Origin: Basidiobolus meristosporus CBS 931.73
Taxonomy: Eukaryota > Fungi > Basidiobolomycota
Length of the DNA: 64,000 nt
Assembly (NCBI GenBank): GCA_002104905.1
Contig: MCFE01000442.1
Coordinates: 10,231 to 74,230, forward strand
Reading direction: 5' to 3'
The translations under genes were made by a program, and so were the position numbers. Of this stretch, positions 3,201-25,345 are shown in pieces (positions within the stretch are counted from its first letter, which is position 1; the number at the start of each line of letters is the position of its first letter). The notes under the pieces are model-generated. The model worked only from the letters and a program-made list of their open reading frames with translations, was not told the DNA's origin and did not search any database.

Positions 3201-4996
3201 TCACTTGAAGGTAATAGCACCCTGTTTGGTTGCGATATTGTTGGAGACACGGGTACTTCTCTAATGGGAACATCATCCTGCGGTGACTTTGTTTGAAGGG
3301 TTGGTTGTGTGGGCTGGATCGAATCAGTGGTCAAAATCGGTTGCAAGGAAGTTTCATCGCTCATTTCTGCTCCCTGAGATATTGGCGAAGCAACAGGTGA
3401 GTCCATCAAGGGTGATGGGCTTGGGATGTTATCGGGAAATGTATTCAGGAATTGTGAAGCTTGCTCACTTCCAGAAGTCTCGATGGGAGGCTTTGAGGTG
3501 TTCTGCAGCCCTGTAGCTTTGCGAGCTGATTTGTCTTTTGTTTTGACTGAAAATACATCTCTTTGATCTTGCGAATTTTGCAGGCCATAATTCAATGAAG
3601 TGGTTGCGGTGGGCCTCTTGAAACTGCTAATAACCGGACCAAGAGAAGATGCTCTCTCGTGAGTTGTATCGGTATGAGGTGGTTGTTTGACCAGTGGATA
3701 TCGTGACACCGCTTTCGAAGGAGTGGCTGAATGGGATGGAGTAAGAGGGTCTTCATGGGAGATATCCATTTGGACTCTTGGACTTTCGTAGCATCTCGGA
3801 CTCATCTCTGTCGGTTCAAAAAAAGTTGTGAGCTCGTATGGCGTAGAAGTTGGTCTTTGCGCTATATTCTTTAAAGCGCTTCTAGAAACAGCTCCTGAAG
3901 AAACGGATTCAATATATTGACAAAGGTACAGATTGCAAAGAGAGCTTACCCTGATTGAATAAACCCTTGCCTGTCGTGTTTTCGGATAAGGTGCCGGAGA
4001 CGCTGGGGCGCTCAACTCCCTTTCCTTTACGAGCATTCAACGGATTACTGTTACTTGGTAAGCTAGTAGTAGGTCGCGGAGGAGTGTACAAGTTGTTTGG
4101 AGATGGAGCTAGTTCTTTCTTGGCTGTCGGGTTTAGTGACCGTTTGTCTAGCCGCAATTTAGGTATATGTGTTTTGGGCTGGTTGAGGTTTGTCGCTGAC
4201 ACTAAAAATCCCCGGGATATATATGGTTATTAAATTACGCTACTGGTATGTAAGAATGGATGAGTTTGTGCGTACCATTTTTCGAGCATTCATAAGAATC
4301 CCCACTTCCTTCTTTGCCCTTTTTGCTCAGACGCGACTTTTTTAGTGGAGGACTCGAGGTCTCATTCACCTCGGGGGATGTAGCTTCTTCGAGAGGTAGA
4401 TGGGATTTGTCCTTTCTTGAATTGGAAGGGGGTGTTTCTTGCAAAAGAGATTTTTTTTCCGGCGAAATGTACACCGGCAGATTCAACTCGTGTGAGTGGG
4501 TGATTTTCGTCAAATTTTGCAACACGCTATGCTGGCTCAGGGAGGGGCTAAAATTGGAAAGCTTAGCTCCTTGAATGTAGGGGTTGACTTTTTGTGTGGT
4601 GCCATAATCCATAACAAAGGAGCGTTGACGCTTTGAAGAAAAAGTTGGTGAAGGTTTCGGGTGACCTTTGAACAGACTGCGGGCGTCTTGGCTGATGTTT
4701 CTGGCGTAATGCTAACTTGTTGCGATCTGAAAGTAGAAAATCCAAATGAGAACGCGAGGATTCCTCGAGTAAAACTAACGTCCAAAGCAACAAGGTGAAA
4801 ATACTTACGGGTTCCCCAAGTCCGACACCCCATTATGTACGTGTATAGATCGTTTTGCGGGTGTGATTGTCTGGTTGTGGGGTGAGTGTATAAATTCCTT
4901 TGGGGACTTTTTAGAATAAATTGGGGATTTGAGTTTTGACACGTACAAAACGGACAAGTCGGAGGGCTTTTGCGCCCTGTTGGTTTCCTCCATCAT
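201..4996 (-). CDS. Multi-exon atypical protein kinase with S/P-rich regions, a bromodomain-like segment (~2860-3130) and a C-terminal kinase domain (~201-1380)
   Basis: Splicing by eye (e.g. intron 604-661, exon 662-1006) joins NGFFKAVH..VVIQLY..MEVLCLTKL..MLRCQQTLKDYL..IAHRDLSEINVMV..AVIIDFGRA..EDVYSLGILIW..LLLGCLAVNPEERWTA, i.e. kinase subdomains I-XI. LNLARIERGLWEGKYTSLEEFTDEL resembles bromodomain helices A/B. The 5' exons (3909-4996) and introns near 1430-1600 are approximate. Confidence 0.8.
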
Positions 4997-23376: not shown

Positions 23377-23942
23377 ATTGGGCAACACGATAGAATGAAC
23401 GTTAAGAAAGAAACGACTCAAAGATACAGGTAATCATCCACTTCAATTTAAAGCAACATCAAATCCTTCTACCATGGAAAAAACCATGGAATCCCTATCG
23501 TGTGGTAAGTTGATTGGAGCTAACCAAAGAATTGTGTAAATGATGCAAATTGTCCCACTAGAATCCAAGATGCTCTCATACAATAAGCATGCTAACGTAT
23601 CATCAATTATTGGACAGAAATATGGCAATTACGCGACACTGTGAAGAGTGGTTGGATGGTCTCCATAGTATCGGCACACAGTGCAATGGAGACTGATATC
23701 ATTACCCATCAGCATTGGAGCATCCAATCATTGTGAGCCTGAAAAAAAAACCCTTTTTTTTCATATTGGGATTCGAAGGAATTGAATAAATTCCCGGAAG
23801 ATGGAATCGATGTCCTTACTACACTCTCCCACCTACTGTGTACGTATTTACTTGCCTGTATGACTTTCGTTGACCAAGTGCTAATCGACTGAACTTCATT
23901 TTAATGAATTAAATGTAGTGAGGACGTCTGTTGGCAATTACC

Positions 23943-24374
23943 ATGTCCGCCGAAAACCAAGAAATCCCCCAAGAAGTCGAAGTCGCCCCTGAGGCCGCTC
24001 CTCGCGGACAAATGTCTGTTGAAGAGGCTCTCCAAGAAGTCCTCAAGAAGGCTTTGGTCCATGATGGCCTTGCCCGCGGTTTGAGAGAGTGTGCCAAGGC
24101 CCTCGACAAGCGTCAAGCCCACTTGTGCGTCCTTGTCGAAACCTGTACCGAGAAGGAGTACATCAGACTCGTTGAGGCTCTCTGCGCTGAGCACAACATC
24201 AACCTCATCAAGGTTTCTGATGCCAAGAAGCTTGGTGAATGGGCCGGTCTTTGCAAGATCGATCGTGAAGGTAGCGCTCGCAAGGTCGTTGGCTGCTCTT
24301 GCGTTGTCGTCAAGGACTACGGAGAGGAATCCGAGGCCTTGAACGTCCTTCTCGAATACTTCAAGTCTCATTAA
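23943..24374 (+). CDS. RPS12: 40S ribosomal protein eS12. CDS has no intron; probable 5'-UTR intron at 23840-23918 and 3'-UTR intron at 24383-24555
   Basis: [72 protein letters not shown]. Confidence 0.98.
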
Positions 24375-24414
24375 ATACTATGGTAAGTAGCTTTGAAATA
24401 TTGAAATCATATTC

Positions 24415-24496
24415 GGCGATGATGATTTTGGTCTCCCTCTTCTGAATCTTGTTGAGGAAAATTTACCAATCCGGAATCATATTATACGTCTGAGCC
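24415..24496 (+). ncRNA. Intronic box C/D snoRNA, SNORD100-like, predicted to guide 18S 2'-O-methylation
   Basis: Terminal stem GGC/GCC, C box ATGATGA (24419), D' box CTGA (24442), C' box TTGAGGA (24452), D box CTGA (24490). The D' guide CTCCCTCTT is complementary to conserved 18S GAGAGGGAG, and TCCGGAATC (24470) to the adjacent GATTCCGGA. It lies inside a GTAAGT..CTAAC..CAG intron. Confidence 0.85.
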
Positions 24497-25345
24497 TACA
24501 CATGAATATGAAAATTACTTCTCTTGATAAGTCAGAATCTAACCAACTTTCACAGGACTTGTCCGTCGTATTTTATGTACATTAATAAATTCTTTTGAAA
24601 TCAATTCCTCGTCTACTTTGTTGCTCTCCACAGGATCTACCTACAGAGTACAGTAACCGACTGTATCATTGCATATCTATATTTAGCACGTCGAACAACG
24701 ACTAATGCTTGAACCGTTAATGCATGGACATTCATTAATTTGCATAACACACATCTCTATGAATGCGAGATCGCTCTGATCTTCAAGCTCGTTCATGTGG
24801 CAGTCGAGTGATTTTATTTCACTTGTCACATGCACAAGTCAGCCATGTATATAGTTGATCAGATTGAATATCTCAGAATATGTACTGTTTCCCTGCATTT
24901 ATTAGCTGCAAGAGCCACAGAGCAAACCCAGAGTACAACTCCTAGCTTTGGTCCCCTTGCTTGGTGATTGGTGCCTCATCGGTCACTCGGATCGTCTATG
25001 AAATTCGTGCTAGGAGTATGCCTTTTGATTATATATTGGCGTGACTATTCTGAATATAGTATGTAAACGCATAGTCGTCTAGCAGATATTGTGCATGCTC
25101 ATGGGCACTTAGTGTACTCTTATAAAGCGCTCAATGTCGGTTGAATTATTTGTCAAGATATCTTCAACGAGCTTCAGTACGTTAAACCTCTTCCAGGCCC
25201 TTGTATCAATCCCATTGTGCTGCCATAGACCGTTTACAACCCAGATATTGAAGAGCCTATTTCCGGCCGAAGAATCATTGCATTTGTAGATTAATTTCTC
25301 GCTTCAGAACTCATTCCTCCAACTCAAAAGCATCAATTGCCAGCC

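What the first reader, a model, noticed from the sequence alone, without database searches (positions are those of the whole stretch)
24383..24555. SNORD100-like C/D snoRNA in a 3'-UTR intron of RPS12
Seen: an intron starts 8 nt after the RPS12 stop and is two to three times the usual length. It contains a complete C/D'/C'/D snoRNA with a terminal stem. The D'+5 rule points to the first G of GGG in 18S GATTCCGGAGAGGGAGCC. A second element, TCCGGAATC, pairs with the adjacent rRNA bases. Established: vertebrate RPS12 introns host SNORD100, which guides 18S Gm436 in this same rRNA motif. Inference: an ancient host-gene/snoRNA linkage kept in a fungus whose RPS12 coding region has no introns, with a UTR intron retained as the carrier. 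It is close enough to the stop codon to avoid EJC-type NMD.
Basis: partly seen in the sequence, partly recalled or inferred. Interest (0 to 1): 0.75.

Follow-up and report, generated by a model that had tools for sequence, protein, structure and literature searches.

The report
SNORD100-type snoRNA in fungal RPS12 intron
A Basidiobolus fungus carries, in an intron just after the stop codon of its ribosomal protein S12 gene, the small RNA that guides one sugar methylation of 18S rRNA, and animals keep the matching RNA in the same gene, so the pairing probably predates the fungus-animal split.

Summary
The intronless RPS12 (eS12) reading frame, 23943-24374, is followed 8 nt later by a GT..CTAAC..AG intron (24383-24555). 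That intron holds a complete box C/D snoRNA at 24415-24496.

- **Target:** the D' guide sits in the same register as Rfam SNORD100, so it points at the 18S G equal to human Gm436.
- **Second element:** TCCGGAATC is complementary to the 18S bases just 5' of the target. This matches the "extra base-pairing" published for HBII-429/SNORD100.
- **Rfam:** SNORD100 is the best family but scores 32 bits, below its 58-bit gathering score. Animal RPS12-hosted homologues from metagenomes score the same (27-37 bits).
- **Conservation:** the same layout occurs in B. meristosporus and in an uncultured fungal lineage (L039, L132). The snoRNA is conserved while the intron flanks are not.
- **Distribution:** a chytrid has the snoRNA 2.4 kb from RPS12. 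Seven other fungal RPS12 loci lack it.

The SNORD100-RPS12 link across animals is already published (Perina 2012). The fungal extension and the 3'-UTR intron carrier appear new. This scan had already noted the same thing on another piece of this genome (s1-212457). Expression, splicing and methylation were not tested.

The parts
23840..23918 (+). putative 5'-UTR intron of RPS12 (GTACGT .. CTAAT .. TAG, 79 nt)
   Evidence: Read from the sequence. The B. meristosporus copy has a similar GTATGT..CTAAT..TAG intron just before its ATG. No transcript evidence.
23943..24374 (+). RPS12 (eS12) coding region, 143 aa, no intron, stop TAA 24372-24374
   Evidence: ORF list. Pfam PF01248 at E 1.7e-27. 96% and 95% identical to B. 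ranarum and B. meristosporus eS12. It falls in the Basidiobolus clade with 100/96 support.
24375..24382 (+). first 8 nt of the 3' UTR, between the stop codon and the intron
   Evidence: Read from the sequence.
24383..24555 (+). 3'-UTR spliceosomal intron, 173 nt: GTAAGT 5' splice site, CTAAC branch site 24539-24543, CAG 3' splice site
   Evidence: Read from the sequence. The same signals flank the snoRNA in L003, L039 and L132. Splicing itself was not tested.
24415..24496 (+). box C/D snoRNA, 82 nt, SNORD100 / snoR30 type (Rfam clan CL00073)
   Evidence: Rfam best hit SNORD100, 32.4 bits, E 2.5e-5. Own model R1 gives 68 bits and no other hit in the window. 80% identical to the L003 copy, against 51-57% for the intron flanks.
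24415..24417 (+). 5' half of the terminal stem (GGC), pairs with 24494-24496 (GCC)
   Evidence: Homologues form stems of different sequence, mean 5 pairs against 1 in slid controls.
24419..24425 (+). box C (AUGAUGA)
   Evidence: Read from the sequence. Aligned to box C of SNORD100.
24430..24441 (+). D' guide GGTCTCCCTCTT. The fifth base upstream of D' (24437) pairs with the first G of GGG in the 18S motif GAGAGGGAG.
   Evidence: Same register as the SNORD100 consensus. Duplex of 9 pairs, one mismatch, then 6 pairs, -19.6 kcal/mol.
24442..24445 (+). box D' (CUGA)
24453..24458 (+). box C' (UGAGGA)
   Evidence: Aligned to UGAGGA of the SNORD100 consensus.
24470..24478 (+). accessory element TCCGGAATC, complementary to 18S GATTCCGGA just 5' of the methylation target
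   Evidence: Duplex -19.8 kcal/mol, reached by 4 of 1000 shuffles. The core CCGGAAT is kept in the long-type homologues and in the chytrid copy. The 18S motif is printed in PMC8472038. Extra base-pairing is reported for HBII-429 in PMC3116282.
24490..24493 (+). box D (CUGA), 49 nt upstream of the branch-point A at 24542
   Evidence: Read from the sequence. The same 49-nt spacing is found in L003.
24494..24496 (+). 3' half of the terminal stem (GCC)
24584..24589 (+). AATAAA, likely poly(A) signal of the RPS12 mRNA, 29 nt into the second 3'-UTR exon
   Evidence: Read from the sequence. Not tested.

Best explanation
This is a working box C/D snoRNA, the fungal counterpart of animal SNORD100 and plant snoR30 (Rfam clan CL00073). 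It is carried in a spliceosomal intron that begins 8 nt after the RPS12 stop codon.

**How it most likely works.**
- RPS12 is transcribed and the 3'-UTR intron is spliced out.
- snoRNP proteins assemble on the C/D and C'/D' motifs, and the lariat is debranched and trimmed to the 82-nt RNA.
- The D' guide pairs with 18S 5'-GAGAGGGAG-3'. Fibrillarin then methylates the 2'-O of the first G of GGG, the G equal to human G436. By my own count from a remembered yeast 18S sequence this is about G388 in yeast.
- The element TCCGGAATC pairs with the adjacent GATTCCGGA as extra base-pairing, which should stabilise a short 9-bp guide duplex.

**Shown here:** the motifs, the complementarity, the conservation, and the host-gene linkage in two fungal lineages and many animals.

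**Inferred:** expression, splicing-dependent processing, the methylation itself, and descent of the RPS12 linkage from the common ancestor of fungi and animals (my estimate about 0.65). Escape from EJC-dependent NMD through closeness to the stop codon is also inferred.
For: - **Anatomy and Rfam:** all motifs are present. SNORD100 is the best family, aligned through C, guide, D' and C'.
- **Same family elsewhere:** the metagenome pattern scan plus tblastn found sense-strand SNORD100-like snoRNAs inside RPS12 in 10 loci. All have SNORD100 as best Rfam hit at 27-37 bits. A plant cluster matches snoR30, of the same clan, at 80-83 bits.
- **Fungal copies with the same layout:** L003 of B. meristosporus, and L039 and L132. 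The L039/L132 clade lies inside fungi with 100/100 support and is sister to Furculomyces with 98/87 support.
- **Selection:** snoRNA identity is 80% against 51-57% for the intron flanks. For L039 against L132 it is 80% against 43%.
- **Structure:** terminal stems differ in sequence but stay paired, mean 5 pairs against 1 in controls.
- **Spacing:** box D to branch point is 49 nt in both Basidiobolus copies and 24 nt in both L039 and L132.
- **Pairing to 18S:** duplex energies are given and the 18S motif.
- **Published support:** extra base-pairing for HBII-429; the animal-wide RPS12 linkage.
- **Chytrid:** a chytrid snoRNA lies 2.4 kb from RPS12.
Against: - There is no transcript, small-RNA or methylation data, so function is inferred.
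- Rfam's gathering score for SNORD100 is not reached (32.4 against 58).
- The guide has a U opposite 18S C at guide position 10, leaving only 9 continuous pairs.
- The terminal stem is only 3 bp.
- Seven named fungal RPS12 loci lack the snoRNA within 2.5 kb: Conidiobolus, Lobosporangium, Piptocephalis, Rhizopus, Rhizophagus, Furculomyces and three B. ranarum copies. The linkage within fungi is therefore patchy.
- The snoRNA sits in different introns in different lineages. Positional homology of the intron is not shown, and repeated capture by RPS12 cannot be excluded.
- The Basidiobolus 18S sequence itself was not available.
Confidence: 0.78

Rival explanations
1. The snoRNA is real and targets the SNORD100 site, but RPS12 hosting arose independently in fungi and animals. 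Under the 'constrained drift' idea, snoRNAs hop between broadly expressed genes, ribosomal protein genes are the favoured landing sites, and the shared host is coincidence or repeated colonisation.
For: - Hoeppner and Poole 2012 found that intronic locations of old snoRNAs are generally not ancestral.
- Perina 2012 speaks of a 'tendency to colonize' RPS12.
- The snoRNA sits in at least five different places in RPS12: after about aa 56, 66, 95 and 124, and in the 3' UTR.
- Most named fungal RPS12 loci lack it.
- In plants it sits in a polycistronic cluster.
Against: - The same snoRNA landing in the same one of roughly 80 ribosomal protein genes in two kingdoms is unlikely by chance.
- The same 3'-UTR layout occurs in two distant fungal lineages.
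- A chytrid keeps the snoRNA within 2.4 kb of RPS12 although it is no longer inside the gene. By chance this would happen in about 1 in 10,000 cases for a single-copy gene.
Confidence: 0.25
2. The snoRNA is made, but not from a spliced intron. It would be cut out of the unspliced 3' UTR or read-through transcript, or transcribed from its own promoter, and the GT..AG signals would be incidental.
For: - Splicing was not observed here.
- Fungi and plants do process some snoRNAs from non-intronic precursors (general knowledge).
- The Cladochytrium copy looks like an independent gene, with a TATAAAA about 190 nt upstream.
Against: - A consensus 5' splice site, branch site and 3' splice site flank the snoRNA in all four fungal loci, although the flanks are otherwise unconserved.
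- The box D to branch-point distance is fixed within each lineage, at 49 and 24 nt.
- AATAAA follows the 3' splice site, not the snoRNA.
Confidence: 0.1
3. It is a dead relic or a chance look-alike, with box-like motifs but no function.
For: - Sub-threshold Rfam score.
- A 3-bp terminal stem.
- One guide mismatch.
- The three B. ranarum RPS12 loci have no recognisable copy, so copies can be lost.
Against: - Conservation of boxes, guide and accessory element against diverged flanks.
- Compensatory terminal stems across homologues.
- The accessory element always matches 18S, even where its extent differs.
Confidence: 0.03

Closest known systems
SNORD100 / HBII-429 (Rfam RF00609), hosted in animal RPS12 introns
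   Same: - Box order C, guide, D', C', D.
- Guide core CUCCCUCU at the same distance from D', so the same 18S target (human Gm436).
- Extra base-pairing next to the target.
- Host gene RPS12, sense strand.
   Different: - Fungal, not animal.
- Sits in a 3'-UTR intron of a gene with no coding introns, rather than in a coding-region intron.
- About 82 nt, with a long C'-D spacer carrying CCGGAAUC.
- U in place of G at guide position 10.
- Scores 32 bits against Rfam's 58-bit cut-off.
Plant snoR30 / Z108 (Rfam RF00046, same clan CL00073)
   Same: The same D' guide and register, and an accessory element complementary to the 18S bases 5' of the target (L021).
   Different: - Plant copies lie in polycistronic snoRNA clusters, not in RPS12.
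- The accessory element is shifted a few bases (GAATCGAACC).
Fungal intron-hosted snoRNAs kept in intron-poor genes (snR59/snR39 in RPL7, snR191 in NOG2)
   Same: An intron retained in a ribosome-related gene, apparently because it carries a snoRNA. Some paralogues have lost the intron and the snoRNA (PMC8476143).
   Different: Those introns interrupt the coding region and their positions are conserved across most fungi. Here the intron is in the 3' UTR and the distribution in fungi is patchy.

Membership tests
Box C/D snoRNA | Box C (RUGAUGA) near the 5' end and box D (CUGA) near the 3' end, brought together by a terminal stem | tested here: met
   AUGAUGA 24419-24425, CUGA 24490-24493, stem GGC/GCC. 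Homologues keep stems through compensatory changes.
Box C/D snoRNA | Internal D' and C' boxes with a guide of at least 9 nt directly upstream of D or D' | tested here: met
   D' CUGA 24442-24445 and C' UGAGGA 24453-24458. The guide forms 9 continuous pairs plus 6 more after one mismatch.
Box C/D snoRNA | A stable RNA of about 60-100 nt bound by fibrillarin, Nop56, Nop58 and Snu13 | not testable with these tools
   No expression or protein-binding data are available.
SNORD100 (Rfam RF00609) | Score at or above Rfam's gathering score (58 bits) | tested here: not met
   32.4 bits. Animal RPS12-hosted homologues from metagenomes also score only 27-37 bits. The model evidently does not reach beyond vertebrates.
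SNORD100 (Rfam RF00609) | D' guide selecting the 18S G equal to human G436 by the D'+5 rule | tested here: met
   The guide aligns column for column with the SNORD100 consensus. The SNORD100 target Gm436 is given in PMC3511168 and PMC3412847.
SNORD100 (Rfam RF00609) | Hosted in an intron of RPS12, sense strand | tested here: met
   Intron 24383-24555 of RPS12. It is a 3'-UTR intron, not a coding-region intron.
SNORD100 (Rfam RF00609) | 2'-O-methylation present at the predicted 18S G | not testable with these tools
   Needs RiboMeth-seq or primer extension.
Extra base-pairing snoRNAs (van Nues et al. 2011) | A conserved element outside the guide, complementary to rRNA next to the methylation site, with an overlap of 0-2 nt allowed | tested here: met
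   TCCGGAATC against 18S GATTCCGGA, overlapping the guide duplex by 2 nt. It is conserved in homologues, and its extensions always follow 18S.
Extra base-pairing snoRNAs (van Nues et al. 2011) | The element stimulates methylation | not testable with these tools
   Needs a mutational assay.
Spliceosomal intron | GT-AG ends with a branch site 15-40 nt upstream of the 3' splice site | tested here: met
   GTAAGT .. CTAAC (13 nt before the 3' splice site) .. CAG. Equivalent signals occur in L003, L039 and L132.
Spliceosomal intron | A spliced junction seen in transcripts | not testable with these tools
   No RNA-seq access.

The most novel reading that the evidence does not exclude
The SNORD100-RPS12 pair was already joined in the common ancestor of fungi and animals. 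That would make it one of the oldest snoRNA-host gene partnerships, and a counter-example at that depth to the view that intronic snoRNA locations are not stable. The snoRNA has stayed with the gene while introns were lost around it. In some fungi a 3'-UTR intron held within 2-22 nt of the stop codon is the last refuge that keeps co-expression without triggering EJC-dependent NMD.
Probability: 0.55. Interest if true: 0.6.

Novelty: new member of a known kind. Interest (0 to 1): 0.5.

Why it matters
SNORD100 living in RPS12 was known from sponges to mammals. Finding it in the same gene in early-diverging fungi pushes the partnership back to about the fungus-animal ancestor. A published survey of 44 eukaryotic genomes concluded that such locations are not evolutionarily stable.

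The finding also gives a clear case of an intron kept only as a snoRNA carrier, placed right behind the stop codon. It predicts an 18S 2'-O-methyl-G that budding yeast has no recorded guide for. Both points can be tested with RiboMeth-seq and RNA-seq in a culturable fungus.

The covariance model built here (R1) could be used to annotate this snoRNA across fungal genomes.

Tried and rejected
- **Rfam at gathering thresholds:** no hit in the 64-kb window. Only the permissive search shows SNORD100.
- **MFE fold of the snoRNA alone:** not informative, z = -1.1, as expected for C/D snoRNAs.
- **Decayed snoRNA copy in B. ranarum L004:** the MAFFT alignment suggested one. I rejected it because local alignments, even with lenient scoring of transitions, score no better than shuffles, and model R1 finds nothing.
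- **Synteny:** there is none between the window and the four Basidiobolus RPS12 loci beyond the gene itself.
- **Intron-length census of the window:** the pattern-based version was too noisy to use.
- **18S reference:** a viral-contig scan for the 18S motif found nothing. I took the motif from printed SSU sequences instead.
- **A second methylation guide upstream of box D:** rejected, because that stretch is not conserved between copies.
- **Papers:** The fungal snoRNAome (PMC5824354) does not mention SNORD100, RPS12 or Basidiobolus in its main text. The Neurospora snoRNA paper (PMC2780460) has no RPS12 or HBII-429 entry and no 18S-Gm3xx/Gm4xx target.
- **Bacterial promoter and terminator scan:** irrelevant for this eukaryote.
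- **The search of earlier findings by sequence:** blank.

Full report
**What is in the window**

The ORF 23943-24374 (+) encodes a 143-aa eS12/RPS12 without coding introns. It matches Pfam Ribosomal_L7Ae at E 1.7e-27. Its closest proteins are B. ranarum (96%) and B. meristosporus (95%) eS12, and a maximum-likelihood tree puts it in the Basidiobolus clade with 100/96 support.

Eight bases after the TAA stop a GTAAGT begins (24383). A CTAAC branch site lies at 24539-24543 and CAG ends at 24555, giving a 173-nt intron. AATAAA follows at 24584-24589.

Inside the intron lies a box C/D snoRNA at 24415-24496:
- terminal stem GGC (24415-17), pairing with GCC (24494-96)
- box C AUGAUGA (24419-25)
- guide GGTCTCCCTCTT (24430-41)
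- D' CUGA (24442-45)
- C' UGAGGA (24453-58)
- TCCGGAATC (24470-78)
- box D CUGA (24490-93)

**Is it SNORD100-like?**

At Rfam's gathering thresholds the window has no hit. A permissive search of 24350-24600 makes SNORD100 (RF00609) the best of 4227 families, at 32.4 bits and E 2.5e-5 for that 251-nt search. The next family scores 20.7 bits.

The alignment runs through box C, the guide core CUCCCUCU, one base, D' CUGA and C' UGAGGAAA. The guide core therefore lies at the same distance from D' as in SNORD100. The D'+5 rule then selects the same 18S nucleotide, human Gm436 (target named in PMC3511168, and PMC3412847).

The score is below the 58-bit cut-off. The cut-off appears too strict for anything beyond vertebrates: all RPS12-hosted homologues I recovered from animal and fungal metagenome contigs score 27-37 bits with SNORD100 as best family. 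A plant cluster (L021) matches snoR30/Z108 at 80-83 bits, and snoR30 belongs to the same Rfam clan CL00073.

**Pairing with 18S**

The 18S motif GGGTTCGATTCCGGAGAGGGAGCCTGAGAAACGG is printed in published SSU sequences.
- The D' guide forms 9 continuous pairs with GAGAGGGAG, then one U/C mismatch, then 6 further pairs (-19.6 kcal/mol). The fifth pair falls on the first G of GGG.
- TCCGGAATC pairs with GATTCCGGA immediately 5' of that (-19.8 kcal/mol, reached by 4 of 1000 shuffles). It overlaps the guide duplex by 2 nt.

This is the "extra base-pairing" arrangement of van Nues et al. 2011. They showed that it stimulates methylation, that overlaps of one or two nucleotides occur, and that HBII-429 (SNORD100) is among the human snoRNAs that have it (PMC3116282).

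Across homologues the core CCGGAAT is kept in the long-type copies. Where the element is longer or shifted it still follows 18S: CCGGAATCGA in L095 and Cladochytrium, GAATCGAACC in plants. The stretch directly upstream of box D is not conserved, so there is no second methylation guide.

**Related loci in fungi**

B. meristosporus L003 has the same layout. An intron starts 22 nt after the stop, and the snoRNA has identical guide, boxes and accessory element. Identity between the two copies is:

| Region | Identity |
|---|---|
| Coding region | 85% |
| snoRNA | 80% |
| Intron flanks | 51-57% |

The distance from box D to the branch-point A is 49 nt in both.

The scan's own index lists a 177-letter finding of the same kind on "another piece of the same genome", with a follow-up naming B. 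meristosporus. L003's intron is exactly 177 nt. The window copy and L003 are therefore probably old paralogues in one genome rather than orthologues. In the tree the window copy branches outside the B. ranarum + B. meristosporus group.

The three B. ranarum RPS12 loci (L001, L002, L004) have no recognisable snoRNA.

A pattern scan of metagenome contigs for box C + guide + D', followed by tblastn with the window's RPS12, found L039. It has an intronless RPS12, an intron starting 3 nt after the stop, the snoRNA, a TACTAAT branch site and a CAG 3' splice site. Its 87% relative L132 has the same layout, with the intron 2 nt after the stop. Their terminal stems differ by compensatory changes (TGTTTG/CAAACA against AAACTTG/CAAGTTT), and both have 24 nt between box D and the branch point. 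This clade sits inside fungi (100/100) as sister to the harpellalean Furculomyces (98/87).

A sequence-only covariance model built from seven long-type copies (A3, R1) found one further fungal copy, in Cladochytrium replicatum. It has box C, the guide, D' CCGA, CCGGAATCGA, box D and a TACCGC/GCGGTG stem of six pairs, one a G·U. It lies 2.4 kb upstream of RPS12 on the opposite strand, in an intergenic region with a TATAAAA about 190 nt upstream.

No copy lies within 2.5 kb of RPS12 in Conidiobolus, Lobosporangium, Piptocephalis, Rhizopus, Rhizophagus or Furculomyces, with filters off.

**Related loci in animals**

Nine further metagenome loci carry the snoRNA in the sense strand inside multi-exon RPS12 genes. 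The introns fall after about aa 56 (L083), 66 (L091), 95 (L015, L045, L076, L090; two copies in L015 and L090) and 124 (L017, L095/L126).

Their exons match animal eS12 best. L017 matches insects. L083, L091, L095 and the L015 group match various invertebrates.

I analysed these genes exon by exon only and built no joined protein. I took none of the fetched contigs for human.

This agrees with Perina et al. 2012, who reported SNORD100 in RPS12 from sponges, Trichoplax and Nematostella to vertebrates, with loss in intron-poor animals. Mouse Rps12 hosts Snord100 in intron 4.

**Mechanism and rivals**

The best reading is a functional methylation guide released from the spliced 3'-UTR intron. Expression, splicing and methylation are inferred, not shown.

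Splicing-dependent processing is supported by consensus splice signals in four loci whose flanks are otherwise diverged. It is also supported by the fixed spacing between box D and the branch point within each lineage. From my own knowledge (Hirose and Steitz 2001), mammalian intronic C/D snoRNAs are processed best about 50 nt upstream of the branch point.

The NMD idea fits the fact that all four fungal introns start 2-22 nt after the stop, well inside the 50-55-nt rule. It remains an inference.

The main rival is independent capture of the snoRNA by RPS12 in fungi and animals. It is favoured by the varied intron positions, the patchy fungal distribution and the "constrained drift" model of Hoeppner and Poole 2012. 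Against it stand the same host in two kingdoms, the same unusual 3'-UTR layout in two fungal lineages, and the chytrid's residual proximity. I put ancestral linkage at about 0.55-0.65.

**Novelty**

The snoRNA family, its target, its extra base-pairing and its animal-wide residence in RPS12 are all published. I found no paper describing a fungal SNORD100 or an RPS12-hosted snoRNA in fungi. Hoeppner and Poole list no yeast counterpart for this site.

This is a new member of a known kind, with a noteworthy evolutionary extension. The scan had already recorded it on the paralogous locus (s1-212457).

Noticed in passing
window 23840-23918; L003 about 2909-2990: RPS12 also seems to have a 5'-UTR intron of about 80 nt just before the ATG: GTACGT..CTAAT..TAG in the window and GTATGT..CTAAT..TAG in L003. 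The gene may keep introns in both UTRs and none in the coding region.
   Followed up: partly
L127:46-138 (-) = L131:3546-3638 (-): Cladochytrium replicatum has a SNORD100-type snoRNA with D' CCGA and a six-pair terminal stem (one G·U). It lies 2.4 kb from RPS12 on the other strand, between a pantoate transferase gene and a peptidase M13 gene, with a TATAAAA about 190 nt upstream. It looks like an independent gene that stayed near its former host.
   Followed up: partly
window 24493/24542; L003 3569/3618; L039 1805/1829; L132 546/570: The distance from box D to the branch-point A is exactly 49 nt in both Basidiobolus copies and exactly 24 nt in both L039 and L132, although the sequence in between is not conserved.
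   Followed up: yes
L001, L002, L004 (B. ranarum GCA_040143965.1): Three RPS12 loci of B. ranarum lack a recognisable snoRNA. L004 still has a GTAAGT about 21 nt after the stop, possibly an intron that lost its snoRNA. Its resemblance to the snoRNA is not above chance.
   Followed up: partly
L028:3569-3659 (-) and 4434-4520 (-); L015 and L090 (two copies each): SNORD100-type snoRNAs occur as tandem pairs in some organisms. L028 has two copies 0.8 kb apart with no RPS12 on the contig. L015 and L090 each have two copies within one RPS12 intron.
   Followed up: no
L021:2667-3695 (-): A plant-type polycistronic snoRNA cluster on a metagenome contig: Z107/R87, two snoR30, snoR31 and snoR31/Z110, all above Rfam gathering scores. 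It shows the plant arrangement of the same guide.
   Followed up: no
L046 (ERZ888423 contig, 4.2 kb): A SNORD100-type snoRNA lies in a cluster with weak U14-like, snR61-like and H/ACA-like hits. This is probably a snoRNA cluster of an unidentified protist or animal.
   Followed up: no
P0268 (named Ectocarpus sp.): This eS12, labelled as brown alga, falls inside the animal clade in the tree. It is probably a contaminant sequence in that record.
   Followed up: no
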